Positions 8,460 through 64,000 of a stretch of 64,000 nucleotides of DNA are shown piece after piece. The translations under genes and the position numbers were made by a program. How positions within the stretch are numbered: position 1 is the stretch's first letter; the number at the start of each line of letters is the position of its first letter. The DNA is taken from positions 1-64,000 of IMG/VR virus record IMGVR_UViG_3300024358_000009; one strand, given 5' to 3'. Under the pieces are notes generated by a model. It was given only the letters and a program-made list of their open reading frames with translations, did not search any database and had not been told where the DNA came from.

Positions 8460-9221
8460 ATGAATTTAAAGCATTTTGTAATTACTAGATTTTTAAATCA
8501 AAAAAATATGAGATTTAGAAAGTTTTTATTAGATGAAATCGTTATTGAATACAGAATGAAATTAATGACTAAGTATTTATATCCATCTTTAAATAATCAA
8601 TCAAATTTAAATTTTACACATATAATATTAATACATGAAAAATTACCTAAAAAATATATAGATCAAATTAATAAAATTGATTGCAATTTTAAAAAAATAA
8701 TTATGACTTCAGAACAGTTAAAAGATTTTATAAAAAATGAATATACTAAATGTGATTTTTTAATAACATCCAGAATAGATGATGATGATATGATATATTA
8801 TAATGCAATTGATGATATACAAAAGTCTATCAATGACAATACAATTATAAATGTATATGGTTATAAAAAAGGTTGCACAATGATAGATGGGGAAACTAAA
8901 AAATTTAAATATAAAACAAACATTAATCATGGAATGATAGCTATATTATTAACATTAATAATAAATACAAAAAAAGTAACAAATCCAATAACTATATACG
9001 ATTTAGGAAATCATACCAAAATTAAAGATCAACTGATTAAAAACCATAAGATGTTAGGAATTGATAATTTACCGGATGATTTCTGGAAACCAAATGTTAC
9101 AGTTGATCCAGCTTGGATATACATTAGACATGAAAAATCTGATAGCGGAACAAAACACAGAAGTGATAAAATAGTTAAATTTGGTAAATTTAAAACAAAT
9201 AAATTTTTTGGCTTAGAATAA
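8460..9221 (+). CDS. putative glycosyltransferase (putative rhamnosyltransferase-like, GT-A)
   Basis: HFVITRF, YPSLNNQS, ITSRIDDDD. Confidence 0.7.
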   Translation: MNLKHFVITRFLNQKNMRFRKFLLDEIVIEYRMKLMTKYLYPSLNNQSNLNFTHIILIHEKLPKKYIDQINKIDCNFKKIIMTSEQLKDFIKNEYTKCDFLITSRIDDDDMIYYNAIDDIQKSINDNTIINVYGYKKGCTMIDGETKKFKYKTNINHGMIAILLTLIINTKKVTNPITIYDLGNHTKIKDQLIKNHKMLGIDNLPDDFWKPNVTVDPAWIYIRHEKSDSGTKHRSDKIVKFGKFKTNKFFGLE

Positions 9222-9223
9222 AT

Positions 9224-9856
9224 ATGTACACAGTAATAATACCAACAATGTGGGTTAATGTTACTTTATTAGAAAAAATGATATGTATATATAATCAGTC
9301 TAACTACATCAATGAAATTATAATAATAGACAATAATCCAATCGATAAAATAAAACTTGATTTTAAAAAAGTAAAAATACTTACAAAAAATAAAAATATA
9401 TATGTTAATCCAGCATGGAATTGGGGCGTGTCTGAATCTAACAACGAAAAAATTATAATAGCCAATGATGATATTTTAATAGAAAATTTTGAAAACATAA
9501 TTATAAAAATTGATGAATTTTTAAAAGATAAAATTGTAATAGGTTTAAAAACCAAATTATTAGAAAATGAAAAGCAACAAGTCTCTATAATAAAATGCCA
9601 AAAAAGACCTTATGGATGGGGTACTTTTATGGCTATGAATAAAAAATCATATATTTATGTTCCAGAATATTTAAAAATTTGGGCTGGAGATGATATTCAG
9701 TTTAATAATAATGATCCTTATATAATTTTAGGAGCAGATATAAAAACAAAAATGTCTGAAACTGTAAAAAAATATAATCTTAGAGTTATGGCAAAAAGAG
9801 ATTCTCGTCTTTACAGAACAAAATGTAATCCAGACGGATCTCTTAAACAATTGTAA
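9224..9856 (+). CDS. glycosyltransferase family 2-like
   Basis: TVIIPT, IIIIDN, YVNPAWNWG, IANDDI. Confidence 0.75.
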   Translation: MYTVIIPTMWVNVTLLEKMICIYNQSNYINEIIIIDNNPIDKIKLDFKKVKILTKNKNIYVNPAWNWGVSESNNEKIIIANDDILIENFENIIIKIDEFLKDKIVIGLKTKLLENEKQQVSIIKCQKRPYGWGTFMAMNKKSYIYVPEYLKIWAGDDIQFNNNDPYIILGADIKTKMSETVKKYNLRVMAKRDSRLYRTKCNPDGSLKQL

Positions 9857-9899
9857 CTGCAAATCGAAAAAGTTAATGTAACAACAAAAGGAGTTAATA

Positions 9900-10292
9900 A
9901 TGAATATTAAAATTGATAATGATAACTATATCATGTTTGCAAGTGAATCTGTTAAGAGATGTTTATTGCGTAATAAGATTTCTGCTATTGATCTTTTAAC
10001 TCCATACACGAAAAAGATTTTTAGCAAAAAAGGAAATTGCAGTATTAAAAAGATAGGCGAAGAAAATATAAGCATTACAAATATATCTGTTTATGATTTT
10101 GACGAAGAAAAAATTACTAAGTGTTTTATTTTGCACAGTGTTGGTAATTATACAGAACTCAAGCCTGTTCTTGATAATAAATGGTCTGTAAAATTAGAGT
10201 GTGGACACAACGCCATTATTGATGATACTGTAGATACAATCTGTAAGGATCATAAAGTTAAATGTTTTTTGTGCGAGAAAGCAAATGCTTAA
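9900..10292 (+). CDS. hypothetical Zn-binding protein (WxxKLECGH...CxxC)
   Basis: WSVKLECGH and KCFLC; paralog of 16121..16555. Confidence 0.6.
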   Translation: MNIKIDNDNYIMFASESVKRCLLRNKISAIDLLTPYTKKIFSKKGNCSIKKIGEENISITNISVYDFDEEKITKCFILHSVGNYTELKPVLDNKWSVKLECGHNAIIDDTVDTICKDHKVKCFLCEKANA

Positions 10293-17585: not shown

Positions 17586-18189
17586 GACAGAAAACATAAA
17601 AGATCGAATTGAAAAAGGCAATTTATTAGCAGATCAAGTTGCAAAATATTTAAATCATAGATTTGGATATAACTTTCAAAAATGCAGCTTAGAAGAAGAT
17701 AGAAATCTAATGATAGATTATAAATGTTTAAAGCACAATAAAACCGCTCAATTTAAGTGTCGTGATAATCAATCCGATATTATATATGAATACATGAAAT
17801 TTATTCCTAGAAATGAAAGTTTTGAAACTGTTCATGGTAGAGATGTAAGAACCAAGTCAGATTTTTATGTATGTTTGTCTTCAGATAAACAAACCATAGT
17901 TGTTTCTAGTACTGAAAAAATCAAAGAAATCGCTAATAAATCTGTTAATCAAGAAATTATTAATGATGTGCAAAAAATATATAATGAAGCAAAAAAGAAA
18001 AATAACAAAAGCAAATTTTTAAAATCTAATTCAAAACATTCAGAGATATGTTTTAAAATAGACGAAGGTAGAGACACTAAAGAATATGGAAAGTTATTAA
18101 TTTTTATTCCTTATAAATCCATACCAAATGCTATAGTAATTGAATTACAAGACGGCGAAAACATCTTAGAAGAAAGCAGTTGGAAATAA
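17578..18189 (+). CDS. putative PD-(D/E)xK nuclease-fold protein
   Basis: EEDRNLMIDY...AQFKCR resembles the D...(Q/E)xK core. Confidence 0.45.
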   Translation: MIKTENIKDRIEKGNLLADQVAKYLNHRFGYNFQKCSLEEDRNLMIDYKCLKHNKTAQFKCRDNQSDIIYEYMKFIPRNESFETVHGRDVRTKSDFYVCLSSDKQTIVVSSTEKIKEIANKSVNQEIINDVQKIYNEAKKKNNKSKFLKSNSKHSEICFKIDEGRDTKEYGKLLIFIPYKSIPNAIVIELQDGENILEESSWK

Positions 18190-19430
18190 TGCCATACTTT
18201 TCTATAACAACACCAACAAACAATGGCCAGTATTTACCTAGATTGTCTAGGTCTTTAGCAGAACAAACATTTAAAGATTTTGAATGGATTGTTTTGCCAA
18301 ATGGAAATGCAAAAATAGATATGGAATCTTTGGCTGTTAAGCCAAGAATAATAAAATCTTCTAAGCCAGATTCAAAGTTAATAGGTTTATTTAAAAAAGA
18401 AGCTTCTATGGCTGGAAATTGCCATGTAGTCGTTGAAGTTGATCATGACGATGAGTTAACGCCTGATTGTTTGCAAGAACTTTATAACGCATTTAATAAA
18501 GACCAAGACATTGATTTTGCATACTCTAATTGTGCTGAAATTGATTTTAACGACAGACCATTTGTATATTCTGACTATTTTGGCTGGAGGAACAGACCAT
18601 TTAATTATAAAGGCAGAGAAATATTAGAACTAATATCATTTGAGCCTTCAGCAGCTTCTTTTTCTAAGATTTGGTTTTCTCCAAACCATGTTAGGGCATG
18701 GAAAAAATCATTTTATGAAAAGATAGGCGGTCATAATGACAAGATGGAAGTTTTAGACGACCATGAAATCCTTTGCAGAACATATATTCAAGGAAAAGTG
18801 CATTTTATAGACAAGTGTTTATATATTTATTACAGACATAAAGATAATACATGCTACGGAGAAAAGAATGCATTTATTCAGGAAGAAACGCTAAACATTC
18901 ATGATAAGTATATTTATCAACTAGCTGAAAAGTGGTGCGATTTAAACGGATTATTAAAAATAGATTTGTGTGGAGGTTTTAGCAAACCAAATGGGTATAA
19001 GTCTATCGATCTTTTAAATGGTGATATTATTCATGACCTTAATTCTCCGTGGCCTTTTAAAAATGAAGAAGTTGGTCTTATAAGAGCACATGATGCACTA
19101 GAACATCTTAAAGACCCAATTCATGTTATGAAAGAGGCTTATAGATGTTTAAAGCCACTGGGATGGTTTTTAACGCAAACTCCATCAACTGACGGAAGAG
19201 GTGCTTTTCAAGATCCAACACATATTAGTTTTTGGAACAGTAATAGCTTTTGGTATTACACTAAAGCAGAAACAGCTAAATACATTGGAACTCCAGTAAG
19301 ATTTCAATTAAATAGAATTAAAAACTTCTTTCCAAATGAATATTGCAAAACACATAATATTCTTTATGTAAAAGCCGATCTTGTTAAAGTTTCAAATGAT
19401 ATTAGAATACCAGGAGAAGTTTCTATTTAG
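18189..19430 (+). CDS. GT2 glycosyltransferase fused to class I methyltransferase domain
   Basis: FSITTPT, VEVDHDD; C-terminal IDLCGG...HDLNSPWPF...HDALEHL. Confidence 0.85.
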   Translation: MPYFSITTPTNNGQYLPRLSRSLAEQTFKDFEWIVLPNGNAKIDMESLAVKPRIIKSSKPDSKLIGLFKKEASMAGNCHVVVEVDHDDELTPDCLQELYNAFNKDQDIDFAYSNCAEIDFNDRPFVYSDYFGWRNRPFNYKGREILELISFEPSAASFSKIWFSPNHVRAWKKSFYEKIGGHNDKMEVLDDHEILCRTYIQGKVHFIDKCLYIYYRHKDNTCYGEKNAFIQEETLNIHDKYIYQLAEKWCDLNGLLKIDLCGGFSKPNGYKSIDLLNGDIIHDLNSPWPFKNEEVGLIRAHDALEHLKDPIHVMKEAYRCLKPLGWFLTQTPSTDGRGAFQDPTHISFWNSNSFWYYTKAETAKYIGTPVRFQLNRIKNFFPNEYCKTHNILYVKADLVKVSNDIRIPGEVSI

Positions 19431-19867: not shown

Positions 19868-20383
19868 TTATTCTCCTGACCATATTTTTTCTTCTGGGCC
19901 TAATAATCTAGCTAAAGTAAATAAAAAATCGCTTAATCTATTTATGTATATAACAATGTTTTTAAGATATTGGTGAACTTCCATTAATTTAACTAAATCA
20001 ATTTCAACCCTACGACATACTGCTCTAGCAAGATGAATTTCGCAATGATTAAATGGTATAATAAAATTTTTAAGTGGCTTTAAATGTTTTGTCATCTCAT
20101 CAATTTTTTGCTCAAGTTGTTTAATGTGATCTTCTTTAATTCTTTCTTTTCCGGTAGCTATTTCAGCACCTATATCAAATAAATGTTTCTGTGTTTCAAC
20201 AATAAAATCGTAAATGTTTTGAACTTTAAGTTCTAATATATATCTTTGATTTACAAGACCTATTGAAGCATTAAGCTCATCCACGCTTCCAAGAAGTTGA
20301 ATATGTGGATCGGTTTTTGGAACACGCCCAACTTTTGGCAAAAGAGTTGTTCCATCATCTCCAGTTTTAGTATAAACCTTCAT
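19868..20383 (-). CDS. pduO: ATP:cob(I)alamin adenosyltransferase, PduO/MMAB type
   Basis: KVYTKTGDDGTT, GSVDELNASIG, LFDIGAEIA, HLARAVCRRVE, YINRLSDFLFTLAR. Confidence 0.92.
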   Translation of the reverse strand: MKVYTKTGDDGTTLLPKVGRVPKTDPHIQLLGSVDELNASIGLVNQRYILELKVQNIYDFIVETQKHLFDIGAEIATGKERIKEDHIKQLEQKIDEMTKHLKPLKNFIIPFNHCEIHLARAVCRRVEIDLVKLMEVHQYLKNIVIYINRLSDFLFTLARLLGPEEKIWSGE

Positions 20384-21023
20384 TTTTGCTCCAATCTAAG
20401 ATTTTTATCTTTGATTCCATACCTATTTTTGTAAAAGGAAATCCATGAAAGCCAAATGGTTTTTCATTATATTCTTCTGTTTTATGTTCTATTGAAAATT
20501 CAAAAGCCGTTCTTAAATCTGGAAATTTAAACTCGTTTTTTATTAATTCATCATAAGAGTGATAACATATTTCTAAATCTTCATTAAATATGATTGGTTT
20601 ATTTTGATATTTATTTGATATATGTTCCATTAATTTTTTTGACCTTAGACTAAAACCGCCATTGCCAACTTTATTTACATGATCATGATTTTTCCAAGGA
20701 GCACCAATATAATCATACTGTAAAAATTTTTCTGACCAAGAATCTGGATTAATTACAAATCCATCATATTGAATTAATAAAACATATTCTGTATTTATAT
20801 ATTTCACTAAATCACGCAAAATAAAAGCACTATATTCTTCCTTGCTATTTATTTTTTTTACTTGTATGAATTCTATTCTGTCTGTTTTTAGTTCATTTTT
20901 ATCAGATATAAATATACATCTTTTAAAATTTATACTTTGCATACTATATAACATGGCAGAAATTGCTTTTTTATGATTTAAGCAATCAACAGCACACAAA
21001 GTAATATTATTTAGTGAAATCAT
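20367..21023 (-). CDS. DUF5672-like protein (GT-A-like)
   Basis: LLIQYDGFVINP..W...FLQYDYIGAPW, VGNGGFSLRS, NED. Confidence 0.75.
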   Translation of the reverse strand: MISLNNITLCAVDCLNHKKAISAMLYSMQSINFKRCIFISDKNELKTDRIEFIQVKKINSKEEYSAFILRDLVKYINTEYVLLIQYDGFVINPDSWSEKFLQYDYIGAPWKNHDHVNKVGNGGFSLRSKKLMEHISNKYQNKPIIFNEDLEICYHSYDELIKNEFKFPDLRTAFEFSIEHKTEEYNEKPFGFHGFPFTKIGMESKIKILDWSKNEGLY

Positions 21024-21507
21024 AAAGACATATTAATCTTTTTGTATTAGAGTCAATAGCTATTTTTTCTAATATTGGTATTTCTTCAAACCATTCAAAT
21101 AAAGTTTCCTCACTTATATTATGATGACAATCATTTGGTCTATTCCACTTGTATGGAACTGATACTATGAGTTTATTAACTATTTTTTTAAGTTCATTAA
21201 ATACATTTTTTTGTCTTCCTTCAAAATGTTCAAATGCTTGTAAGCATATAGCTAAATCAAACTTATGATTGAATGTCCAAGGTGTAATTGTACAATCAAA
21301 TACATAATTTATATGTTTGTTATGTTGTTTTTCTATTCTTACGGAATTTAAACACAACGGAAAATATGAACATCCTAATTCTAAAATAGACAGTGGATTT
21401 AAATTTTTTGCAATTTCTATTACTTCTTTATAATAATTCCATCTTTTAACAAAATATTTGTCTTCTTTACATTTTTTATCATAATCTTCTTTTGTAACAA
21501 ATTTCAT
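21007..21507 (-). CDS. class I SAM-dependent methyltransferase-like
   Basis: ILELGCS, FDLAICLQAFEHF, LIVSVPY. Confidence 0.7.
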   Translation of the reverse strand: MKFVTKEDYDKKCKEDKYFVKRWNYYKEVIEIAKNLNPLSILELGCSYFPLCLNSVRIEKQHNKHINYVFDCTITPWTFNHKFDLAICLQAFEHFEGRQKNVFNELKKIVNKLIVSVPYKWNRPNDCHHNISEETLFEWFEEIPILEKIAIDSNTKRLICLYDFTK

Positions 21508-21899
21508 TTTTTAGGACTTTTTGTTTTTATTCCTAATTGCTTATATACATTTCTTGCTTTTGGATTGTCATCTATTGCTAATATAACTTTGTCCTTAATG
21601 CTTTCTGCGTGTTTCTTTTTTGATTCTAATTGTTGTTCTTTATTGTTTCCAATATTATTCATCATTAGTCTATTATATTTAATTCCTGATTTTTTTAAAA
21701 CTTTTGTTGTTTCTGATCTATCTGATTCTGGTCTTCCTGTAACTATATAAATTTTATTTGTTTTTGCTAATTCATTAACATAATCAATCATTTTTTTAAT
21801 TGGATATATACCATTACGAATAATAGTGTTATCTATATCAACAATAACTACTGTTGATTTGCTAAAGAATTTCTCAACTTGTTGGTAAAGGTTCAGCAT
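21504..21899 (-). CDS. HAD-superfamily phosphatase (PseT C-terminal-like)
   Basis: VDIDNT, IVTGR, AIDDN. Confidence 0.8.
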   Translation of the reverse strand: MLNLYQQVEKFFSKSTVVIVDIDNTIIRNGIYPIKKMIDYVNELAKTNKIYIVTGRPESDRSETTKVLKKSGIKYNRLMMNNIGNNKEQQLESKKKHAESIKDKVILAIDDNPKARNVYKQLGIKTKSPKK

Positions 21900-22095
21900 T
21901 GTATCGCCCCATTGTAATATTCTTTGTTGCAACAACATCCTTATTAGTAAATTCCCATATTAATCCATTATTAAGAATAACAGTAAATACTTTCTCTATT
22001 TCAGTGCCATATTCAGTAACTAACCAAATTCTTCCCCTACCTTTTGGAGTTTCTACTTCTAATTCTTGTCTTGGTTCATATATCACAATTGGCAT
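21874..22095 (-). CDS. conserved phage hypothetical protein
   Basis: ETPKGRG...EYGTE...IWEFTN.D.....NITMGR pattern. Confidence 0.65.
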   Translation of the reverse strand: MPIVIYEPRQELEVETPKGRGRIWLVTEYGTEIEKVFTVILNNGLIWEFTNKDVVATKNITMGRYNAEPLPTS

Positions 22096-22756
22096 TTTTA
22101 ATCTCTATCGCAGAATCTCTTCTGCATAAATCTTGATATAATTTTTTATCTTTCGACCATTCTTTGCCTGTCCACCACTCAAATCCATTCAATTCACTTT
22201 TATAAATACAGCATTCTTCGTAACCACCCATCATATAATAATAAATACACCCAGATTTTTTAGCTAAAGTAGTTTCAATTAGCGTACTAACATTTCCTAA
22301 AGAAAGTTGTGGTTTTTTATAATCCCACGCAAATTGAACTCCGACAAAAGATTTTTTAAAAAGCTTATAACAAACAAACCCTATCAATTCTGATTCATAA
22401 AAATATTGAATTGAATTTTCTAACATAAGCTCATTATCAAAAACATGTTCGCTAAGAAAACCTCTTTTTGTTTGATAACACTTTGATATTCTTTCAACAT
22501 CTTCCTTAGATGGTTTTCCTAATTGATATTCTATCTTTTTGCTTATTTTTTTTGTTTTTTTATGGCATTCTAGTTCTGACAAGTTATACCTTATTGATCT
22601 TGCTTGAAACCAATAATCGTTCCAAGGTAACCAACCATTTTCTAATAAATTATCTAAATCGTCATTAATTTCTGGGTATCCAAAAACACCACAGTGAATT
22701 AAATCTTGATTAGATATTTTTCCAAAACCATTTATATGATCAAAAAATATTTTCAT
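22076..22756 (-). CDS. arginyl/leucyl-tRNA-protein transferase-like (ATE1/Bpt family)
   Basis: LLENGW, C-terminal FAWDY....SLG....LIE...AK..G..YYYMMGGY..C.IYK...GFEW. Confidence 0.65.
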   Translation of the reverse strand: MKIFFDHINGFGKISNQDLIHCGVFGYPEINDDLDNLLENGWLPWNDYWFQARSIRYNLSELECHKKTKKISKKIEYQLGKPSKEDVERISKCYQTKRGFLSEHVFDNELMLENSIQYFYESELIGFVCYKLFKKSFVGVQFAWDYKKPQLSLGNVSTLIETTLAKKSGCIYYYMMGGYEECCIYKSELNGFEWWTGKEWSKDKKLYQDLCRRDSAIEIKNANCDI

Positions 22757-22806: not shown

Positions 22807-23280
22807 ATGAATATTTTTGCATTAGATTTAAACACCAAACAAGCTGCTGAATGGCATGTAGATAAACATGTAGTCAAAATGCCATTAGAAAGTGCCCAAA
22901 TGCTTTGTACAGTTCTTAATCAACTTGGAGTTAAAACACCATATAAATCAGCTTATGCAAAACATCCATGCACTATTTGGGCAGGAGAAAGCATGGATAA
23001 TTTTATTTGGTTATGTGAACTTGGATTAGAACTTTGTAAAGAGTATACTTATCGTTATGAAAAAGAACATAAGTGTGAAGCTATTATTAAAGAGTGTTTA
23101 ACATATTCTTGTAAAGTTCCAAATAAAGGACTTACAAAATTTGCTCAAGCTATGCCAGAAGAATTAAAAAAAGACAATCCAATAGATGGTTATAGAGAAT
23201 ATTACATAAGGTGTAAATATCATATAGCATCTTGGAAAAAAAGAAATATTCCTTTTTGGTTTATAAAATATGAAACTTAA
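22807..23280 (+). CDS. pyrimidine dimer DNA glycosylase / DenV family protein
   Basis: MNIFALD...HVDKHVVKMPLESAQML, HPCTIW, YREYY. Confidence 0.85.
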   Translation: MNIFALDLNTKQAAEWHVDKHVVKMPLESAQMLCTVLNQLGVKTPYKSAYAKHPCTIWAGESMDNFIWLCELGLELCKEYTYRYEKEHKCEAIIKECLTYSCKVPNKGLTKFAQAMPEELKKDNPIDGYREYYIRCKYHIASWKKRNIPFWFIKYET

Positions 23281-23866
23281 CATCGTTACTGTTCTATGGA
23301 GAAAAAACTATATATTAGAACAGTATAAAACAATACCTAAAAAACCAGACATTAATTGGATTTTATGTAAAACAAATTTGTGGGGAAAGATACCAAATCA
23401 AATTTTATTTAATACAGAATTAAATACAATTGTTTTAGAAACTAAAATTAAAACTAAAAATAAAACAGAGCATATAACAGATTTTGTTTTAAAAATTAAC
23501 CATGGATTAAAAAATGTAGAACATGGTTTTTTTTATATTTTAGATGATGATAATTCATTTAATAATGAAATTTATAATGTATTTAATGAATATAAAAATT
23601 CTAATTATAAAATGATAATAGGAAATCAAATAAGAAATAAAAGAGGAAAAATTCTTTCGGCTCAATATCCAAAGCATGGATGTATAGATATGGGAAATGT
23701 TATTTGTTCAACAGATATTTTTAATAAAGTAGATTATTTTAATAACATAAACAAAAAAAATCGTTTATATGATTGGCAATTTTGGTTAGAATGTTTTAAT
23801 TCTATATCAAAAGATGATGTTTTGCTTTTACATAAAAATATTTTTAATTATAATGGATTAAGATAA
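23270..23866 (+). CDS. glycosyltransferase family 2-like
   Basis: FYILDDDN, IDMGN, DWQF. Confidence 0.6.
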   Translation: MKLNIVTVLWRKNYILEQYKTIPKKPDINWILCKTNLWGKIPNQILFNTELNTIVLETKIKTKNKTEHITDFVLKINHGLKNVEHGFFYILDDDNSFNNEIYNVFNEYKNSNYKMIIGNQIRNKRGKILSAQYPKHGCIDMGNVICSTDIFNKVDYFNNINKKNRLYDWQFWLECFNSISKDDVLLLHKNIFNYNGLR

Positions 23867-24516: not shown

Positions 24517-24517
24517 A

Positions 24518-27086: not shown

Positions 27087-27089
27087 CAT

Positions 27090-54468: not shown

Positions 54469-54475
54469 GAACATT

Positions 54476-55141: not shown

Positions 55142-55150
55142 AGGATATTT

Positions 55151-57175: not shown

Positions 57176-57176
57176 A

Positions 57177-58736
57177 ATGAAAAAACATAAATTACTCCTT
57201 GTCAATGATAGCACATCCTTATCAACAGGATATTCTGTCTATGGCAAGGAGATTTTTTATAGACTTTTAAAAACTGATCAATTTGAATTAGCAGAACTTT
57301 CTAGTTATACAGATTCTATTGATCAATCTATACCTTGGAAAATATATCCAGCTGTTCCAGCTAATTTAGCAGATGAACAATTAAAAGATTTTATATCAGA
57401 TCATGAAAATTCATTTGGAAAATATGTTTTTGAAAATGTTCTTCTTGATTTTAAGCCAGATACAGTAATATCTTTCCGTGATCCTTGGATGGATTCTTTT
57501 ATATCAAATTCTCCATTGAGATCATACTATAACTGGATATATATGCCTCCAGTAGATGGAGTTGGACAAACAAAAGAATGGATTTCTTTATATTCTTGTG
57601 CAGACTATATTTTAACATATTCAAAATGGGCCAAAAACCTGTTGTCAAGTTATCCAAATATAAATGTTAATGCTATAGCACCACCTTCAGCAGATAATTG
57701 TTTTGTTCCTTTAGAAGATAAAAAACAGTTAAAAGTTGAATTTGGCATACCAGAAAATGCATTTATTATTGGCTCTGTAATGAGAAATCAAAAAAGAAAA
57801 CTTTTCCCAGATTTGATATTCTCATTTGCTAAACTGATAAGTTTATTGCCAATAGAAGTTTCTTCAAAAACATTTTTATACTTACATACTTCATATCCAG
57901 ATCTTGGATGGGATATACCAAGATTATTAATAGAGTCTGGAGTATCTAATAAAATTTTATTTACATACACATGTGATAGTTGTGGTTGCAATTTTCCATC
58001 TGTGTGGAAAGGAAACTGCATTTACTGCATTCAATGTAGAAATCAAAGTTGTTTTACAGCAGGAACAAAAAATGGTGTTTCAAAAGAACAGATGGCAAAA
58101 ATTTATGGAATATTTGATTGTTTAGTTCAATATTCAATATGCGAAGGTTTTGGAATGCCACAAGTTGAAGCTGCTTATTGTGGAGTTCCAGTATTTTCAG
58201 TTAATTATTCTGCTATGCAAGATATGCCAGAAACAATATTAGCTACTCCAATTAATTTTTCGCTTCAGATAGAATCCGAAACTCATAGAGGAATTGCAAA
58301 TCCAGATAAAAACGATTTAATCAATAAGCTTAAGGAACTAATATTAACTCCAGAATTTATTAGAGAAAATAAAAAATACGAAATAGCTTCTTTGGCCAGA
58401 GAATCATATGACTATAATGTTTCTGCGAATACTTGGATCAATGCTATATTTTCATTAAAATCTGCTAAATCTTGGAATTCAGAACAGATTATTCTTAATG
58501 AAGAAAAATTTGATTATACAAATTTAAATGACGGCGAGTTTTTAGAAAAAGCATTTGAAAAAATTATTAAAATAAAAAACAAAAATATTTATCAAGTAAA
58601 AGGATCTTTCAAAAAAAGACTGTTTAATAAATTTGAAAAAAATAGAACTGAAACTACCAGAGAAAGCATAATTACAACTTTAAATAATATAAGAAAATCT
58701 ATAAATCATTGGGAAGAAAAGAGAGTTTCTAAATGA
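57177..58736 (+). CDS. GT4 (GT-B) glycosyltransferase with Cys-rich insertion
   Basis: STGY, RNQKRKLFPDL, EGFGMPQVEAAYCG; CDSC..CIQC insert. Confidence 0.88.
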   Translation: MKKHKLLLVNDSTSLSTGYSVYGKEIFYRLLKTDQFELAELSSYTDSIDQSIPWKIYPAVPANLADEQLKDFISDHENSFGKYVFENVLLDFKPDTVISFRDPWMDSFISNSPLRSYYNWIYMPPVDGVGQTKEWISLYSCADYILTYSKWAKNLLSSYPNINVNAIAPPSADNCFVPLEDKKQLKVEFGIPENAFIIGSVMRNQKRKLFPDLIFSFAKLISLLPIEVSSKTFLYLHTSYPDLGWDIPRLLIESGVSNKILFTYTCDSCGCNFPSVWKGNCIYCIQCRNQSCFTAGTKNGVSKEQMAKIYGIFDCLVQYSICEGFGMPQVEAAYCGVPVFSVNYSAMQDMPETILATPINFSLQIESETHRGIANPDKNDLINKLKELILTPEFIRENKKYEIASLARESYDYNVSANTWINAIFSLKSAKSWNSEQIILNEEKFDYTNLNDGEFLEKAFEKIIKIKNKNIYQVKGSFKKRLFNKFEKNRTETTRESIITTLNNIRKSINHWEEKRVSK

Positions 58737-59860
58737 ATTTACTGTATATAAGTGATTATAGATCATTTAGTGGTTATGGAAAAGCTGCAATAGAATATAT
58801 CAGAAGTTTATCGACAACTGAATTCAATGTATTTTGTCGCCCATTAATATTCAACGCAATTGATTTAACAGAAATACCAGAAGATATAAAAAAAATAGAA
58901 GATAAAGAACCAAAAAACATAGATGTTGTTATTCAACACACAATACCCGCTCATATGCAGTATGCATCAAAATATTGCAATATAGGAATGTTTGCTTGGG
59001 AAACAGATAGTTTTGTGTGTTCTGGATGGAAAGATAATTTAAATTCAATGGATTCGGTATTTGTTTTTAACAGGCAAATGGTTGATGCGTGTAAAAAAAG
59101 TGGCGTTACCAAAGAATTAAAAGTAATTCCACATGCAACAAATACAGATAAATATTTTAAAAAATATAAAATCCCTAATTTTATGTCTGAAATAAAAACA
59201 AATGACAAATTTATTTTTTATACAATAGGAGAATTTAATAAAAGAAAAAACATGGCATCTCTTTTAATGTCATATTTTTTAGAGTTTGGCAAAGACGAAA
59301 ATGTATGCTTACTAATAAAGTCTAATTGTTCTCAGGAAGAATTTTTTACTTTTTGTGATCAAATTTCAAATTCTTTAAAATGTAAATACATACCAGAAGT
59401 TATTTTAATAAATGAAAAAATATCAGAAGATGAAATATGTTCAATACACTATTATTCAGATTGTTTTGTTCAAACATCGCATGGAGAAGCATGGTCTATT
59501 CCAGCTTTTGAAGCTATGTGTTTTGGAAAAACCCCAATCGTACCGGCTTCTTCGGGGTATTTAGATTATATGGATGATAGTTGTGGTTGGTTTATACCAG
59601 TAACAGAATCGCAAGTATTTTCTATGTTTAAGGATAGTCCTGGATTATATAGAGGGGATGAAATTTGGTGGCAAGTTGATATTTCAAAAACTAGACAACT
59701 AATGAGAGAGGCTTACTCAAATGAAAAAATCAGATTACAAAAAAGCGAAAATGGTATAGAAAAGTCTTTTAGTTTTTCCCATGCCGAAATAGGCAAATTA
59801 CTCTCAGAGAATATAAAATGGGCAATCGAAAGAAAATCGTTAAGTGGAAAGACTTTGTAA
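58733..59860 (+). CDS. GT4 (GT-B) glycosyltransferase
   Basis: SGYG.AA, FAWET, FNKRKN, SHGEAWSIPAFEAM. Confidence 0.88.
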   Translation: MNLLYISDYRSFSGYGKAAIEYIRSLSTTEFNVFCRPLIFNAIDLTEIPEDIKKIEDKEPKNIDVVIQHTIPAHMQYASKYCNIGMFAWETDSFVCSGWKDNLNSMDSVFVFNRQMVDACKKSGVTKELKVIPHATNTDKYFKKYKIPNFMSEIKTNDKFIFYTIGEFNKRKNMASLLMSYFLEFGKDENVCLLIKSNCSQEEFFTFCDQISNSLKCKYIPEVILINEKISEDEICSIHYYSDCFVQTSHGEAWSIPAFEAMCFGKTPIVPASSGYLDYMDDSCGWFIPVTESQVFSMFKDSPGLYRGDEIWWQVDISKTRQLMREAYSNEKIRLQKSENGIEKSFSFSHAEIGKLLSENIKWAIERKSLSGKTL

Positions 59861-60552: not shown

Positions 60553-60602
60553 TTTGATTTAGATAAGACACTTGCTACAATATTTTAATTGTAGGAGTTC
60601 TT

Positions 60603-61436
60603 ATGCCAAATCAAATTAATAGTATATTATGGAAGTTGAGAGAAAATAAGAAAACTCTCAATATTGTTACTGAATTTTATGACGAAAAAACATTATTTGA
60701 TTTATCTAAAACTAATCATAATTTTTTTATACTTCCAAAAAATAATCAAAATGGATGGAATAATTTTTTCAGAAAAAAACCAGATAATATATCAGTATTA
60801 AAGAATTACGAAGAATGTTTTTTTAGTTTATCTGAATATGCTTTTGATGTTTTTTTGTCATTTACTGGAAAATGGGATTATTTATCACTGCATTTTGGAA
60901 TACCAAAAATAAAACCTTTGAAAACAATTGGAATAGATGAAGATCTTTTTTTGCCAAATGAGATTAAGAGTGAAGTGTTTTTATATGTAAATGGTAGTTC
61001 AAAAATAAATTTAGAAGATGTAAGATATATAACAAAAGGATTAAACTTTGTTAGTTTAGATGATAATAATAGAAGAAAATTTGAAGACTTATTAAATTTG
61101 TATAAGTCATCAATGGTTTATATAAATTTTTCAAAAACAAACAAACTTTCTCAATCAATGTTAGAAGCTATGTCCTGTGCTTGTTGTCCATTAGCATTTG
61201 ATAGCGAAGAAAATAGGAAAATAATAAAACATGGAGAAAATGGGTTTTTGTTTAACAGTAAAGAAGAAGCTAGGGTTATATGCGAAAAGTTACTTGTTTC
61301 AAAAGATTTTTTGAAATCTATATGTAATAATGCAAGAAAAACAATAGTTGAAAAATTTTCATTTTCATCTTTTATAAACGAATGGAATGATCATATTAAA
61401 AATTCATTGAATTTAAAATGGTGGGAAACTATATGA
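60603..61436 (+). CDS. GT-B glycosyltransferase-like protein
   Basis: SMLEAMSCAC, IIKHGENGFL, RKTIVEKFS. Confidence 0.75.
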   Translation: MPNQINSILWKLRENKKTLNIVTEFYDEKTLFDLSKTNHNFFILPKNNQNGWNNFFRKKPDNISVLKNYEECFFSLSEYAFDVFLSFTGKWDYLSLHFGIPKIKPLKTIGIDEDLFLPNEIKSEVFLYVNGSSKINLEDVRYITKGLNFVSLDDNNRRKFEDLLNLYKSSMVYINFSKTNKLSQSMLEAMSCACCPLAFDSEENRKIIKHGENGFLFNSKEEARVICEKLLVSKDFLKSICNNARKTIVEKFSFSSFINEWNDHIKNSLNLKWWETI

Positions 61437-61912
61437 AATTAAACTTGCTTATAAATCAAAAACATTTAGCTAAAGATGGATATTTAAATATAGATCCAAC
61501 TGCTTTACCAGAAGAAGCACCTTTAATAGTTGAAGGTAATCCAACCATTTTAGAAAAACATGTTGAAGATGGAGAAGCAGAAGAAATTATAGCAATAAAT
61601 GTTATTGATTATGTAGCTCATACAAAAGTATTTGATGTTTTGAAACAGTGGGCAGGAAAACTTGGTCATAAAGGTAAATTAATTGTAGGATTTACAGATA
61701 TATTTTCTGTTTCTAGAAGATTTTATATAGGACAAATTGACAAAAAAGAAATCGCAAATATTCTATATGGAAAATGTTTAGAGGGTTGGGATGTTAAAAA
61801 AGCATGTCTATCTATAGATGATATGAAACAAAAATTTTTAGAATGTGGATTAACTATTAAAAACATTAAATTTTTAGAACATTTTATTGTTATAGAAGGA
61901 GAAAGACCTTGA
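61433..61912 (+). CDS. divergent class I methyltransferase-like protein
   Basis: GYLNID, EEIIAINVIDYV, W..KL..KGKL. Confidence 0.5.
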   Translation: MKLNLLINQKHLAKDGYLNIDPTALPEEAPLIVEGNPTILEKHVEDGEAEEIIAINVIDYVAHTKVFDVLKQWAGKLGHKGKLIVGFTDIFSVSRRFYIGQIDKKEIANILYGKCLEGWDVKKACLSIDDMKQKFLECGLTIKNIKFLEHFIVIEGERP

Positions 61913-62739
61913 GCGAAAATGACAAATTCATGGATACAGCTTGTAAATACTGTATCTTTTCAGAAAAACAAGGTAATTTACAAACAGGTTGTAAATATGG
62001 AAATTTAGAAAAATTTAAAAATGCCGGTTGTGAAATTATAGAAGCTGAAGATCAAGATGAACAGTTTTTTGTCATTAAAAATAGATTATGTATGGCTTTA
62101 AGAAGAAGTCCGTGGGGTGAATCTTTATCGGATGAAGAAAAGATAAACAAAGTTAGAAAAGATATAACTACCAGAATAACATGCATTTTGGTAGTTAAAG
62201 AAACAGAAAACAACATTGAAAACATTGTTAAAACTTTTAAATCTGCTATAGCACAAAAGATAAAGTTTCAAAATATACATTTTATTTTGGAAAAAAAATC
62301 TAGTATTAAAATTGGCTCATTAATGAATGCTATTAAACCTATTGAGTGCGATATTCAATGGTTTGTTAAACAAATGGTTCATGACGACTTTTCTTTTAAG
62401 GATGGAATAGATGAAATAGTTGAAAAAGAAAAGAGCGTATTTTCTGCTATATTCTTTTCTGGTTTTTCTATTCCAGAAGATTTTGTTCAATCTATAGATA
62501 AAAGCATTAATGATGATTTAAACAGATTTATTATGCTTAAACCATACAAAGAAAATGGGTTAGTTTTTCAAAACAAATCTTTTAAAATCTTTGGTGGAAA
62601 CAAAGACGCTATTAATGAAGAATTAAAAGTTAATTTTTCTTCGATTTTAGAAAAAGTTGATTTTATAGCAAAAGATCAAAATTTAACCAATTTGATTGGA
62701 GACATAGAATCAATATGTCATTCGATAAAACAAGCGTAG
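61909..62739 (+). CDS. hypothetical protein (Cys-rich N-terminus, possible degenerate GT-A)
   Basis: TACKYC.F...TGC; context only. Confidence 0.5.
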   Translation: MSENDKFMDTACKYCIFSEKQGNLQTGCKYGNLEKFKNAGCEIIEAEDQDEQFFVIKNRLCMALRRSPWGESLSDEEKINKVRKDITTRITCILVVKETENNIENIVKTFKSAIAQKIKFQNIHFILEKKSSIKIGSLMNAIKPIECDIQWFVKQMVHDDFSFKDGIDEIVEKEKSVFSAIFFSGFSIPEDFVQSIDKSINDDLNRFIMLKPYKENGLVFQNKSFKIFGGNKDAINEELKVNFSSILEKVDFIAKDQNLTNLIGDIESICHSIKQA

Positions 62740-63365
62740 GTATATTTGTGTGTTTGGAAGAACGATCTTTATTTATAAAAGATTTTATCAAAAGTTTGTC
62801 TCTAGCAGCAAATGATAACACTCATTTGCACATTGTAGATATAGATTCATCTTCTGATATAGATGAAAATATATTAGAGATGATTGGAGATATTCAATTT
62901 GAAGATACTAAAGAAGAATTTGTTTCATCGAAAGGTAAGCATGGAAAATTAAATATAACTTTAACAAAGATGTGCAAGCGTAAAAAAGATATAGTTAAAA
63001 ATTATTATTTTTACGAATACATGACTAACTATGATTTAATAGGATTTTTTGAATCAAATGTAGTTTTTTACCCAGAAATATTAAAAAAGGCAGCTTCTTT
63101 ATTAAATAATGACAGCTTTATTTTTGGTTCTTGTTATTTTGATAATGATGTTTTAACTAAAAGTAATTTCAGGTATACAAATTATCAAAAGTCTTTTACA
63201 GTAGACACTTGTATCAATACGAATTTTTTTATAAATAAACTAGCAGCAGAAAGTATAAAGCCAGTTGAGTTTTTTCAAAAACAAAAGAACCCAATTTCAA
63301 TAATCGGCGAAAACTTTCTTTGCTATAAATTTTATGAAAAAGGCTTTATGGTAAAAGAACAATGA
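62715..63365 (+). CDS. hypothetical protein (possible degenerate GT2 fold)
   Basis: Context and alternating beta/alpha pattern. Confidence 0.45.
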   Translation: MSFDKTSVGIFVCLEERSLFIKDFIKSLSLAANDNTHLHIVDIDSSSDIDENILEMIGDIQFEDTKEEFVSSKGKHGKLNITLTKMCKRKKDIVKNYYFYEYMTNYDLIGFFESNVVFYPEILKKAASLLNNDSFIFGSCYFDNDVLTKSNFRYTNYQKSFTVDTCINTNFFINKLAAESIKPVEFFQKQKNPISIIGENFLCYKFYEKGFMVKEQ

Positions 63366-64000
63366 GTATATGCGTTATAATACCAGCTGCCGGTATAGGC
63401 AAGCGTATGAAATCTCATGGTCCAAAAGCCAATATTCAAATAGATAAAAATAATACTGTAATAGATAGAATATTTTCTATTGTTAAAAGAAATTTTGAAA
63501 AAACAGAAAACATTGTTGTTGTTGGTTTTCAAAAAGAAAAATTAAATTTTAAAAATCAATCTGCAAAAATAGTATTTAATGAAAATTTTGAAAATACTAA
63601 TGTATCTAAATCAATTAATTTGGGAATATCTAATTCAAAAAGCAAAGATTGTTTGATTATATATGGCGATATAGTGTTCGATAAAAATATATTTAAAAAC
63701 TTTGATTCATCAACAAGTTGTATTTGGGTTGAAAAAAGCGAAAAAAGAAGTTCTGAGGTTGGAATAAATTTTGAAAATGGTATTGTTGAACACTTTAGTT
63801 ATGGAGTTTATCCAAAGTGGGCACACATAGTTTTTCTAAAAGAAAAAGACAAAGACATTTTTTTAAACATATCTAATAATGAAAAGACAAACAAATGGTT
63901 TGGTTTTGAGATTTTAAATAAGATGATAGATATGGGAGTTAAGTTTTCAATAAAAACAATAGAAGAAGTTGTTGAAATAGATACATATTTAGATATAAAC
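63362..64000 (+). CDS. nucleotidyltransferase (NTP_transferase / LicC-like), partial
   Basis: Hand-translated VIIPAAGIGKRMKSHGPKA, IIYGDIVF, EIDT..D; runs off window end. Confidence 0.85.
   Translation, partial: MSICVIIPAAGIGKRMKSHGPKANIQIDKNNTVIDRIFSIVKRNFEKTENIVVVGFQKEKLNFKNQSAKIVFNENFENTNVSKSINLGISNSKSKDCLIIYGDIVFDKNIFKNFDSSTSCIWVEKSEKRSSEVGINFENGIVEHFSYGVYPKWAHIVFLKEKDKDIFLNISNNEKTNKWFGFEILNKMIDMGVKFSIKTIEEVVEIDTYLDIN

What the first reader, a model, noticed from the sequence alone, without database searches (positions are those of the whole stretch)
8460..64000. Unusually large glycosylation arsenal
Seen: about 11 reasonably supported glycosyltransferase-like genes (8460, 9224, 18189, 20367, 23270, 24518, 31246, 37552, 57177, 58733, 60603), two doubtful ones, several methyltransferases, an aminotransferase and a nucleotidyltransferase. 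Inference: a virus-encoded glycan pathway for virion coating, DNA hypermodification or host-surface remodelling.
Basis: partly seen in the sequence, partly recalled or inferred. Interest (0 to 1): 0.6.

Follow-up and report, generated by a model that had tools for sequence, protein, structure and literature searches.

The report
Phage with many sugar-transferase genes
An uncultured river phage of about 149 kb carries at least ten glycosyltransferase genes plus enzymes that make and tailor sugars, which puts it at the top of the known range for phages, though the kind of system is already known.

Summary
Two more (24518, 37552) have a GT-A fold in confident models. Two (9224, 23270) give only sub-threshold GT2 signals. 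One (20367) is DUF5672, and whether that family is a GT was not tested. The methyltransferases, a short DegT-like protein and a nucleotidyltransferase are also real.

The element is a tailed phage with no cultured relative. The 206-kb contig looks like a chimera: one roughly 149-kb genome followed by 57 kb of a second strain that is 68-84% identical.

The genes fall into two classes:
- **Core cluster.** It starts at 57177, just after the DNA polymerase genes, and runs past the window end to at least 65036. Four distant relatives share it in the same order.
- **Variable islands.** The islands at 8.4-9.9 kb and 23.2-27.7 kb differ between strains.

No lipid-carrier or export genes were found, and no enzyme that makes hydroxymethyl-pyrimidine. 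My best guess is glycosylation of virion proteins (0.4), with remodelling of host surface glycans close behind (0.33). DNA glycosylation is disfavoured. This is a new member of a known kind.

The parts
8460..9221 (+). GT-A type glycosyltransferase (Rhamno_transf). It lies in a strain-variable island.
   Evidence: PF11316, 43.5 bits against a cut-off of 23. The second strain (B) has only a 31%-identical allele there.
9224..9856 (+). Probable GT2-like glycosyltransferase (weak call), in the same island.
   Evidence: PF00535 at 18.3 bits, below the 23.3 cut-off, matching model positions 1-91. Strain B has no orthologue in its place, only a different GT2-like gene on the opposite strand (19 bits).
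18180..19430 (+). Fusion of a GT2 domain and a SAM-dependent methyltransferase domain.
   Evidence: PF00535 at 30.2 bits (residues 11-143) plus Methyltransf_11/23 (residues 288-339). It is 84% identical in strain B and present in strain relatives.
20367..21023 (-). DUF5672 protein. A sugar-related role is suggested by context only.
   Evidence: PF18922 at 95.1 bits. It sits beside GTs and methyltransferases in strain relatives. PDB and PHROGs searches gave nothing.
21504..21938 (-). HAD-family phosphatase, possibly acting on a sugar phosphate.
   Evidence: Acid_phosphat_B at 35.1 bits. It is kept next to DUF5672 in strain relatives.
22076..22756 (-). ATE_C-like transferase (aminoacyl-tRNA protein transferase type). 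Its link to the glycan is uncertain.
   Evidence: PF04377 at 32.5 bits.
23270..23866 (+). Possible GT-A glycosyltransferase (weak call). First gene of the island found only in strain A.
   Evidence: PF00535 at 13.5-14.2 bits. 11 of 23 homologues hit PF00535 below threshold. The family has an invariant 'LDDDN' motif (L91-N95) after a hydrophobic stretch.
23866..24516 (+). Short DegT/DnrJ/EryC1-like protein (sugar aminotransferase family).
   Evidence: PF01041 at 52.6 bits, but only 216 aa. Homologues of 203-205 aa are kept in other strains, so it is not a fragment. phmmer found no PDB match.
24518..25216 (+). GT-A (GT2-like) glycosyltransferase, assigned by fold.
   Evidence: Model pLDDT 88.7. 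The top Foldseek matches are nearly all GT2 enzymes, E about 1e-6. The family has an invariant D95 in a 'DLD' motif. The Atlas lead agrees.
25216..25818 (+). Sugar methyltransferase of the CmcI / rhamnosyl O-methyltransferase type.
   Evidence: Methyltransf_24 at 59.2 bits and RMNT_CmcI at 35.5 bits.
25815..27086 (+). ATP-grasp ligase, a possible amide-forming tailoring enzyme.
   Evidence: ATPgrasp_Ter at 63.4 bits and ATP-grasp_3 at 48.8 bits. An NCBIfam carbamoyl-phosphate-synthase-like model scores 102 bits, below its cut-off.
27090..27638 (-). SAM-dependent methyltransferase. Last gene of the island found only in strain A.
   Evidence: Methyltransf_11 at 26.4 bits. The island 23247-27688 is absent from strain B and lies in the most AT-rich stretch of the window (22.8% G+C over 24001-28000).
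27694..28200 (+). GNAT acetyltransferase flanking the island.
   Evidence: Acetyltransf_1 at 40.8 bits. It is conserved in strain B and in strain relatives at the island border.
31246..32307 (+). GT4-type (GT-B) glycosyltransferase. A core gene of the lineage.
   Evidence: Glyco_trans_1_4 at 50 bits and Glycos_transf_1 at 45.5 bits. Orthologues at 38-42% identity occur in all four distant relatives.
37552..38214 (+). GT-A glycosyltransferase, assigned by fold.
57177..58736 (+). Large GT-B glycosyltransferase. First gene of the conserved core cluster, one small ORF after the DNA polymerase III C-terminal half.
   Evidence: Glycos_transf_1 at 35.3 bits. Syntenic orthologues of 549-571 aa occur in four relatives.
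58733..59860 (+). GT4 glycosyltransferase of the core cluster.
   Evidence: Glycos_transf_1 at 37.6 bits. BLASTP orthologues in three of four relatives; the fourth (G002) has a Glycos_transf_1 match at the same position (8699-8842, 37.6 bits).
60603..61436 (+). GT-B glycosyltransferase of the core cluster, with a short N-terminal half.
   Evidence: Glycos_transf_1 at 37.2 bits and Glyco_trans_1_2 at 27.5 bits. Orthologues of about 340 aa occur in the relatives.
61418..62739 (+). Two conserved cluster genes of unknown function (61418-61912 and 61909-62739).
   Evidence: No Pfam or PHROGs hit, here or for the G005 orthologues. They are syntenic in three or four relatives.
62715..63365 (+). Unknown ORF that sits where the relatives have a clear GT2 gene.
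   Evidence: No Pfam or PHROGs hit. The relatives' GT2 scores 57-88 bits at this position. hhalign against those GT2s gave E 0.005 over 172 columns but low probability, so this is inconclusive.
63362..64000 (+). Nucleotidyltransferase (NTP_transf_3 / IspD-like) of the core cluster. The gene ends at 64051, beyond the window.
   Evidence: PF12804 at 37.2 bits and IspD at 28.7 bits. Orthologues in all four relatives. A Glyco_trans_1_2 GT follows at 64026-65036 (47.8 bits).

Best explanation
The window belongs to an uncultured tailed phage of about 149 kb from river water. It carries its own cytoplasmic machinery for building a glycan.

Shown:
- Sugar supply: a nucleotidyltransferase and a GDP-mannose 4,6-dehydratase-like enzyme.
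- Assembly: at least ten soluble glycosyltransferases of the GT-B/GT4 and GT-A/GT2 types.
- Tailoring: O/C-methyltransferases, a short DegT-like protein, an ATP-grasp ligase, acetyltransferases and, in the late operon, a sulfotransferase.

The genes form two classes.
- A core cluster lies just downstream of the DNA polymerase genes (one small ORF between). Its order is GT4, GT4, GT-B, two unknown genes, GT2 position, nucleotidyltransferase, GT. Together with GT4 31246, it is conserved in order across the lineage.
- Two islands (8.4-9.9 kb and 23.2-27.7 kb) hold different mixes of GTs and tailoring enzymes in different strains.

Inferred: the core enzymes assemble an oligosaccharide in the cytoplasm directly on phage virion proteins (capsid, tail or fibre). 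The island enzymes then vary its outer sugars from strain to strain, giving the virion a variable coat. The acceptor and the sugars are not shown by any result here.
For: - At least 10 firm GTs.
- Sugar supply: nucleotidyltransferase; Gmd-like enzyme at 355.6 bits on TIGR01472 and 198.5 bits on PF01370, lying in the late, minus-strand block two genes before the terminase. Relative G005 has three SDR sugar epimerase/dehydratase genes inside the cluster.
- The core cluster is syntenic in strains A and B and in four relatives of 136-161 kb with about 52% terminase identity. Conservation across a lytic-type lineage fits a function built into virion production.
- No protein with three or more membrane-spanning segments of flippase or polymerase size occurs in A, B or the relatives, so the phage has no lipid-carrier or export step of its own.
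- A GT2-like gene and a sulfotransferase sit inside the late structural operon, between the capsid gene and a collagen-like fibre gene. A GT2 (69747) sits at the far end of that operon.
- Strain-level mosaicism of the island.
- Published precedents for virion glycosylation in mycobacteriophages are cited in PMC12619734 and PMC12801897.
- The cluster appears in contigs of four metatranscriptome libraries. This is weak, because DNA carry-over is not excluded.
Against: - No glycoprotein, acceptor motif or GT-capsid contact was shown.
- Most GTs lie on the strand and in the block of the replication genes, so they are probably early or middle genes. That suits host or DNA targets equally well.
- The GT families (GT4, GT2, Rhamno_transf) and the cyanophage precedents are usually read as acting on host envelope glycans.
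- The collagen-like repeats that could be acceptors occur only in this strain group, not in the relatives that share the core cluster.
- Soluble GTs could equally act on the host's lipid-linked intermediates and use the host's own flippase.
Confidence: 0.4

Rival explanations
1. Host surface remodelling. The phage GTs and tailoring enzymes act on the infected cell's own lipid-linked glycan intermediates (LPS, O-antigen-like or exopolysaccharide) and rely on host flippases and exporters. The changed cell surface would block superinfection, or stop progeny being lost on infected cells and debris.
For: - The same gene families and the same kind of clusters in cyanomyoviruses are read this way: P-SSM2 with 24 LPS genes (PMC1079782) and S-SCSM2R with 13 GTs and 22 cell-wall genes (PMC12801897).
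- Most GTs sit with early or middle replication genes on the plus strand.
- Strain-variable islands are typical of genes facing competing phages.
- NCBIfam best matches are exopolysaccharide and PEP-CTERM-type GT4 enzymes, all far below their cut-offs.
Against: - The core cluster is conserved in every near-complete genome of the lineage, whereas the cyanophage LPS clusters are accessory (absent from P-SSM4).
- The phage has no initiating phosphoglycosyl transferase, flippase, polymerase or ABC exporter.
- A GT2-like gene and a sulfotransferase are embedded among structural genes.
- No integrase or lysogeny module was noticed in the parts scanned. This was not searched exhaustively.
Confidence: 0.33
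2. DNA hypermodification. The GTs attach mono- to oligosaccharides to modified bases in the phage genome to evade restriction, as in T-even phages and in the methyltransferase / dioxygenase / GT gene clusters of metagenomic phages.
For: - The core cluster lies just downstream of the DNA polymerase III genes (one small ORF between). Nearby are a T4 gp1-like dNMP kinase (49846) and a C5-cytosine DNA methyltransferase (2013).
- Phage DNA GTs are known to be recruited from LPS and teichoic-acid type enzymes (bioRxiv 10.1101/2023.12.21.572611).
Against: - No ThyA-like hydroxymethylase and no TET/JBP dioxygenase at E <= 1 in this genome, or at E <= 0.1 in the four relatives that share the core cluster.
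- No T4 alpha- or beta-glucosyltransferase family.
- The C5 methyltransferase has no BLASTP orthologue in the distant relatives and has no GT next to it.
- Ten or more GTs with methyl, amino, acyl and sulfo tailoring far exceeds the mono- to tri-saccharides reported on DNA.
Confidence: 0.08
3. Mixed targets. The conserved core cluster and the late-operon enzymes decorate the virion, while the strain-variable islands act on host surface glycans, or the reverse. The 'arsenal' would then be two or more unrelated systems that happen to share enzyme families.
For: - The genes lie in five or six separate groups with different conservation: core (31246 and the cluster from 57177 to at least 65036), shared only by strains A and B (18180, 20367, 37552, 69747), and islands variable between A and B (8460/9224, 23270-27638).
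- They sit on different strands and in different transcription blocks.
Against: Nothing shows two separate products. The single recognised nucleotidyltransferase and the single Gmd would have to feed both.
Confidence: 0.15

Closest known systems
Cell-wall / LPS gene clusters of T4-like cyanomyoviruses (P-SSM2, S-SCSM1, S-SCSM2R)
   Same: These are aquatic lytic-type phages with many GTs, nucleotide-sugar epimerases/dehydratases and a cytidylyltransferase. P-SSM2 has 24 LPS genes and S-SCSM2R has 13 GTs. Their function is likewise inferred only from sequence.
   Different: They belong to an unrelated lineage: the terminase here is at most about 27% identical to that of any sequenced phage, and replication uses a split DnaE-type polymerase. 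Here a large part of the set is core and syntenic across the lineage and sits next to the replication genes. The firm count of 10 GTs lies in about 149 kb.
Virion glycosylation in mycobacteriophages (Freeman et al. 2023, known to me through citations in PMC12619734 and PMC12801897)
   Same: Phage-encoded soluble GTs that would glycosylate capsid and tail proteins in the cytoplasm, with no export machinery.
   Different: Those phages carry only a few GTs: two in the one genome report listed (PMC11256854); the rest is my own knowledge. Their glycans were shown by experiment. Here there are at least 10 GTs plus sugar synthesis and tailoring, and no experimental evidence.
Autonomous glycosylation of chloroviruses and mimiviruses (from my own knowledge: PBCV-1 GMD and the A064R GT-GT-methyltransferase; mimivirus fibril sugar clusters)
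   Same: The virus makes its own nucleotide sugars, including through a GDP-mannose 4,6-dehydratase. It uses soluble GTs, among them a GT-methyltransferase fusion (compare 18180), together with aminotransferase and acetyl/methyl tailoring. A mimivirus GT (R699) is among the structural matches of 37552.
   Different: Those are eukaryotic giant viruses. This is a tailed bacteriophage. No homology beyond shared folds was shown.
Phage gene clusters for sugar hypermodification of DNA (Pyle et al., bioRxiv 10.1101/2023.12.21.572611)
   Same: GTs related to LPS and teichoic-acid enzymes in metagenomic phages. A C5-cytosine methyltransferase is present in this genome.
   Different: The defining dioxygenase (5mYOX/TET) was not found, nor any hydroxymethylase. 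There is no methyltransferase-dioxygenase-GT neighbourhood.
'Moraphages', large aquatic phages with four core GT orthogroups (PMC12619734)
   Same: An uncultured aquatic phage lineage in which several GTs belong to the core genome.
   Different: Moraphages are true jumbo phages that use a family B polymerase and carry DnaK/DnaJ, and their predicted hosts are Bacteroidota. This phage uses a split polymerase III alpha subunit, is about 149 kb, and its host lead points to Planctomycetota.

Membership tests
GT-B glycosyltransferases (Pfam Glycos_transf_1 / GT4-like) | Score above the curated Pfam cut-off for PF00534, PF13692 or PF13524 | tested here: met
   31246, 57177, 58733 and 60603 in the window, plus 64026-65036 just beyond it.
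GT-A glycosyltransferases (Pfam Glycos_transf_2 and relatives) | Score above the curated Pfam cut-off | tested here: met
   Met for 8460 (PF11316), 18180 (PF00535) and 69747(-) (PF00535). Not met for 9224 (18.3 bits), 23270 (about 14 bits) and 122923 (18 bits).
GT-A glycosyltransferases (Pfam Glycos_transf_2 and relatives) | GT-A fold with an acidic DxD-type motif after the fourth strand | tested here: met
DUF5672 as a glycosyltransferase | Demonstrated GT-A fold or GT activity for the family | not tested
   20367 scores 95 bits on PF18922. PDB, PHROGs and local profile comparisons gave nothing. I recall that Pfam places this family in the GT-A clan, but I could not check that here. The only support is its position beside GTs and methyltransferases in other strains.
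Wzx/Wzy- or ABC-dependent surface polysaccharide pathway (self-contained) | Initiating phosphoglycosyl transferase, flippase, polymerase or exporter, all of which are polytopic membrane proteins | tested here: not met
   A hydropathy scan found no ORF with three or more membrane-like segments in A (other than one 3976-aa structural protein with three widely scattered segments) or in B, and only three small ORFs (133-222 aa) in the relatives. The scan is crude, and a host-supplied pathway is not excluded.
Glycosylated-DNA systems (T-even type, or methyltransferase + 5mYOX + GT clusters) | An enzyme that makes hydroxymethyl-pyrimidine: a ThyA-like hydroxymethylase or a TET/JBP dioxygenase | tested here: not met
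   No PF00303 or PF12851 match in a six-frame search of this genome (E <= 1) or of four relatives (E <= 0.1). A very divergent enzyme could escape these models.
Glycosylated-DNA systems (T-even type) | A T4 alpha- or beta-glucosyltransferase family member | tested here: not met
   No PF11440 or PF09198 match at E <= 1.
Phage virion glycosylation systems | Glycans attached to structural proteins of the virion | not testable with these tools
   This needs virions or heterologous expression with mass spectrometry.
Jumbo phages (genome above 200 kb) | A single genome longer than 200 kb | tested here: not met
   Positions 149,318-206,326 of the contig are a collinear copy of 1-58,947 at 68-84% nucleotide identity (58-94% amino-acid identity for all but a few poorly conserved ORFs). 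The near-complete relatives used here are 136-161 kb.

The most novel reading that the evidence does not exclude
A widespread, uncultured phage lineage builds its own oligosaccharide coat on the virion from a conserved assembly line of about six GTs. This branch of the lineage probably infects low-GC freshwater Planctomycetota. It diversifies the coat between strains by swapping GT, methyl, acyl, amino and sulfo tailoring cassettes at fixed islands. In effect these would be phage 'serotypes', analogous to bacterial O-antigen loci.
Probability: 0.25. Interest if true: 0.7.

Novelty: new member of a known kind. Interest (0 to 1): 0.45.

Why it matters
- **Scale.** Ten firm GTs, and up to 15 candidates, in about 149 kb approaches the published maximum for aquatic phages: 13 GTs in one cyanomyovirus (PMC12801897).
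- **Core rather than accessory.** Part of the set is a conserved core of a large uncultured lineage, with more than 597 terminase relatives in IMG/VR. That makes it a good system for asking what large phage glycan clusters are for, a question still answered only by inference in cyanophages.
- **Possible antigenic variation.** The strain-variable tailoring islands suggest selection on the fine structure of the glycan. If the glycan is on the virion, phages would show antigenic-type variation driven by something in the environment.
- **Host lead.** The pointer to freshwater Planctomycetota matters in itself, because to my knowledge very few phages of that phylum are known.
- **Assembly warning.** The '206-kb, 100% complete' record is most likely a two-strain chimera, which affects jumbo-phage censuses.

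Tried and rejected
- **megablast of 24 kb against sequenced phages:** no match. tblastn with the polymerase and the terminase found only distant hits, at most 33% and about 27% identity.
- **PHROGs on ten unexplained ORFs:** nothing useful.
- **Single-sequence phmmer against PDB** for 20367, 9224, 23270, 24518, 37552 and 23866: nothing significant.
- **Family profiles against PDB:** only a GT2 (SunS) at E 0.18 for the 37552 family; nothing for the 24518 and 23270 families. Only the fold searches settled 24518 and 37552.
- **Local hhalign between shallow ortholog profiles:** uninformative. Two larger runs timed out.
- **Collagen-like fibres as the acceptor of the core cluster:** rejected. The G-X-Q repeats (203, 123, 91 and 10 triplets in four proteins) occur only in this strain group and in none of the four relatives that share the cluster.
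- **23866 as a broken aminotransferase continued by 24518:** rejected. 24518 is a GT-A by fold, and the short DegT-like form is conserved in other strains.
- **Flanking repeats that could explain island exchange:** only AT-rich chance matches.
- **Group I intron in strain B's interrupted polymerase gene:** no Rfam match.
- **Jumbo-phage status:** rejected.
- **Not used:** the large representative-protein search, complex prediction and any alternative genetic code.

Full report
**What the sequence is**

The window is the first 64 kb of a single 206,326-bp IMG/VR virus record. It is AT-rich, with 31.7% G+C over the whole contig, and densely coded. In the window most genes lie on the plus strand, and there is one tRNA-Met.

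It is a tailed phage.
- A minus-strand late block at 69-135 kb encodes the large terminase, portal, major capsid protein, a collagen-like tail fibre and giant ORFs of 3976, 2647 and 2250 aa.
- The window holds a replication and nucleotide module. It comprises a B12-type ribonucleotide reductase, a radical-SAM/SPASM protein, RecA, DnaB, DnaG and a dNMP kinase. It also has a PD-(D/E)XK nuclease, ThyX, PhoH and peptide deformylase.
- Its DNA polymerase III alpha subunit is split into two ORFs with an RNase T-like exonuclease gene between them.

No sequenced phage is close. megablast found nothing. The polymerase is at most 33% identical to that of any sequenced phage, and the terminase at most about 27%. 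Uncultured relatives are numerous: more than 597 terminase loci in IMG/VR.

**The contig is probably two genomes**

- Positions 149,318-206,326 are a collinear second copy of positions 1-58,947. Identity is 68-84% at nucleotide level and 58-94% at protein level for all but a few poorly conserved ORFs. The first 140 bases are 97% identical to 149,318-149,457.
- A 221-kb IMG/VR contig from a sister sample is the same sequence at 99.99% identity. It continues the second copy for another 15 kb, still collinear.
- The near-complete relatives used here are 136-161 kb, and a strain relative is 157.8 kb.
- I therefore read the record as genome A (about 149.3 kb, circular or permuted) joined by the assembler to part of a related strain B. 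It is not a jumbo phage.
- This does not affect the window, which is all strain A. It does provide a natural comparison between two strains.

**Checking the eleven calls**

- Six pass Pfam gathering cut-offs for GT families: 8460 (Rhamno_transf), 18180 (GT2 plus a methyltransferase domain), 31246, 57177, 58733 and 60603 (Glycos_transf_1 group).
- Two had no Pfam or PHROGs hit, so I collected homologues and modelled them.
  - 24518 has 25 homologues and an invariant D95 in a 'DLD' motif. Its model has pLDDT 88.7, and its best structural matches are nearly all GT2 enzymes: SpsA, archaeal mannosyltransferase, dolichyl-phosphate mannose synthase, TarS/TarP and ArnC.
- 9224 reaches 18.3 bits on PF00535, below the 23.3 cut-off.
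- 23270 reaches about 14 bits. However, 11 of its 23 homologues also touch PF00535 below threshold, and the family has an invariant 'LDDDN' motif (L91-N95) after a hydrophobic stretch. I rate both 9224 and 23270 as probable but unproven.
- 20367 is a clear DUF5672 protein at 95 bits. I could not test whether that family is a GT. It sits beside GTs and methyltransferases in other strains.
- The tally in the window is eight firm, two weak and one open.

**Other enzymes**

- Methyltransferases at 2894, the C-terminal half of 18180, 25216 (CmcI / rhamnosyl-O-methyltransferase type) and 27090(-).
- A 216-aa DegT-like protein at 23866, an ATP-grasp ligase at 25815 and a GNAT at 27694.
- An NTP_transf_3/IspD-like nucleotidyltransferase at 63362, which runs off the window end.

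Beyond the window:
- Another GT-B at 64026-65036 and a GT2 at 69747-70574(-).
- A GT2-like gene (18 bits) and a sulfotransferase (31.5 bits, above its cut-off) between the capsid gene and a collagen-like fibre gene.
- A GDP-mannose 4,6-dehydratase-like gene at 133334-134329(-), which scores 355.6 bits on TIGR01472, just under its equivalog cut-off, and 198.5 bits on PF01370.

Genome A thus has 10 firm GTs and up to 15 candidates among about 186 ORFs.

**Two classes of genes**

I compared A with B and with four distant relatives (G002-G005; about 52% terminase identity; 38-42% G+C).

- **Core cluster.** It follows the polymerase C-terminal half after one small ORF (56789-57175), and is syntenic. 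Its order is a large GT-B (about 550 aa), GT4, GT-B, two unknown ORFs, a GT2, the nucleotidyltransferase and another GT. G005 adds three SDR sugar epimerase/dehydratase genes.
  - Where the relatives have their GT2, strain A has ORF 62715, which has no Pfam hit. A profile comparison was inconclusive.
  - GT4 31246 is also core.
- **Genes shared only by A and B.** These are 18180, 20367, 37552 and 69747.
- **Variable islands.**
  - The 8384-9882 island (8460 and 9224) is replaced in B by a 31%-identical Rhamno_transf allele and a different GT2-like gene on the other strand.
  - The 23247-27688 island lies in the most AT-rich part of the window (22.8% G+C over 24-28 kb) and is missing from B.
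  - Two further strains on ENA contigs have the same flanks: the GT2-methyltransferase fusion on one side, and the GNAT, deformylase and GT4 on the other. Between these flanks they carry different combinations. The genes involved are DUF5672, a GT64, an extra GT1, the short DegT-like protein, CmcI/TylF/MT_24 methyltransferases, a hexapeptide acetyltransferase and the ATP-grasp ligase.
  - The short DegT-like form is therefore conserved and is not a gene fragment.

**What the glycan is attached to**

- *Own export pathway.* A hydropathy scan found no flippase-, polymerase- or exporter-like membrane protein in A, B or the relatives. All the GTs look soluble.
- *DNA.* There is no ThyA-like hydroxymethylase and no TET/JBP dioxygenase in this genome or in the four relatives, and no T4-type DNA glucosyltransferase in this genome.
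  - The published phage DNA-glycan clusters depend on a methyltransferase plus a dioxygenase, and they add one to three sugars.
  - The C5-cytosine methyltransferase at 2013 has no GT neighbour and no BLASTP orthologue in the distant relatives.
  - DNA glycosylation is therefore unlikely, though a very divergent dioxygenase cannot be excluded.
- *Virion or host envelope.* Several observations tilt me towards virion proteins, by analogy with mycobacteriophages, chloroviruses and mimiviruses:
  - the core conservation;
  - the enzymes embedded among structural genes;
  - the Gmd lying in the late, minus-strand block two genes before the terminase;
  - the phage's own sugar supply.

  Two things keep host-envelope remodelling nearly as likely. 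Most GTs sit among the replication genes, and the cyanophage literature reads similar clusters as host-directed.
- *Collagen-like fibres.* I tested whether they are the acceptor. Their G-X-Q repeats are absent from the relatives that share the core cluster, so they are not its conserved target.

**Ecology and host**

- The sequence occurs at 99-100% of sampled words in many riverine metagenomes. Six metatranscriptome libraries hold 89-100% of the words, and in the four of them laid on the stretch, contigs cover the GT cluster with no differences listed. This is compatible with expression, but DNA carry-over is not excluded.
- The phage's DUF1501 gene (13457-14737) is 65-72% identical to genes of freshwater Planctomycetota and Gemmataceae MAGs with a local G+C of 43-45%. 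The phage copy has 39.5% G+C against 31.7% for the genome. That fits a fairly recent capture from such a host. It is one gene, so it is a lead only.

**Comparison with what is known, and verdict**

Large sugar-gene sets are known in several viruses:
- cyanomyoviruses: 24 LPS genes in P-SSM2, and 13 GTs in S-SCSM2R, described there as possibly the highest number in a marine phage genome;
- 'moraphages', with four core GT orthogroups;
- mycobacteriophages and giant viruses.

This phage belongs to none of those lineages, and its GT density is at the top of the range. The kind of system is not new, and its function here remains inferred.

I rate it a new member of a known kind, interest 0.45. The most novel reading still open is a strain-variable virion glycan coat in a lineage whose A/B branch probably infects Planctomycetota.

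Noticed in passing
whole contig: 1-149,317 versus 149,318-206,326 (window 1-58,947 is the duplicated part): The last 57 kb of the 206-kb record is a collinear copy of the first 59 kb at 68-84% nucleotide identity. The first 140 bases are 97% identical to the junction. A 221-kb IMG/VR contig repeats the same join and extends the second copy by 15 kb. This is most likely an assembly chimera of two strains of a phage of about 149 kb, not a jumbo phage.
   Followed up: yes
window 13457-14737 (+): A DUF1501 (sulfatase-superfamily) gene is 65-72% identical to genes of freshwater Planctomycetota and Gemmataceae MAGs. Its G+C is 39.5% against 31.7% for the phage and 43-45% around the bacterial copies. 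It is a host lead.
   Followed up: partly
window 52310-56776 (+): DNA polymerase III alpha is split into two ORFs: PHP plus NTPase domains at 52310-54223, and finger plus HhH domains at 55151-56776. An 82-aa ORF and an RNase T-like exonuclease gene (54476-55141) lie between them. The same arrangement occurs in four distant relatives.
   Followed up: partly
contig 201,161-204,156 (L008:14161-17156), strain B: In the second strain the polymerase C-terminal half is further interrupted by a 1.3-kb insert. The insert carries a 309-aa ORF weakly similar to HNH/homing endonucleases (E about 1e-5 to 1e-7). Rfam found no group I intron.
   Followed up: partly
window 19868-20383 (-) and 39032-41320 (+): A cobalamin adenosyltransferase (161 bits) occurs together with a B12-dependent class II-like ribonucleotide reductase. 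The phage may secure adenosylcobalamin for its own reductase.
   Followed up: no
window 41331-42353 (+): A radical-SAM/SPASM protein lies directly after the reductase. It is the family type of sulfatase-maturating enzymes, and the genome also has a DUF1501 sulfatase-like gene and a sulfotransferase. A link between them is speculative.
   Followed up: no
contig 99,586-122,359 (-), outside the window: Four structural proteins carry long collagen-like G-X-Q repeats (203, 123, 91 and 10 triplets; mostly GSQ, GFQ, GNQ). There are also giant ORFs of 3976, 2647 and 2250 aa. The repeats are absent from the four distant relatives.
   Followed up: partly
contig 122,363-123,858 (-), outside the window: A sulfotransferase (31.5 bits, above its cut-off) and a GT2-like gene (18 bits) sit inside the late operon, between the capsid gene and a collagen-like fibre gene.
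   Followed up: partly
window 2013-3529 (+): A C5-cytosine DNA methyltransferase (189 bits) is followed by a second SAM methyltransferase. Both are conserved in strain B at 71-74% identity; no BLASTP orthologue in the distant relatives.
   Followed up: partly
window 57000-62900: The GT cluster is covered by contigs from four riverine metatranscriptome libraries with no differences listed, at word depth 6-22. This suggests active infection in situ, but it is not proof of transcription.
   Followed up: partly
contig 134,326-135,772 (-), outside the window: Weak sigma-70 region 2 (E 5e-4) and HTH (E 9e-3) signals appear in the two ORFs at the start of the late block, just before the Gmd gene and two genes before the terminase gene. 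They could be a phage late-transcription factor.
   Followed up: no
window 34869-37552 (+): Three ORFs (269, 316 and 300 aa), conserved between strains A and B, lie directly upstream of GT-A 37552. They have no Pfam hit. The third matches PHROG 2859 (unknown function, 52 bits), and the first has an N-terminal hydrophobic segment.
   Followed up: no
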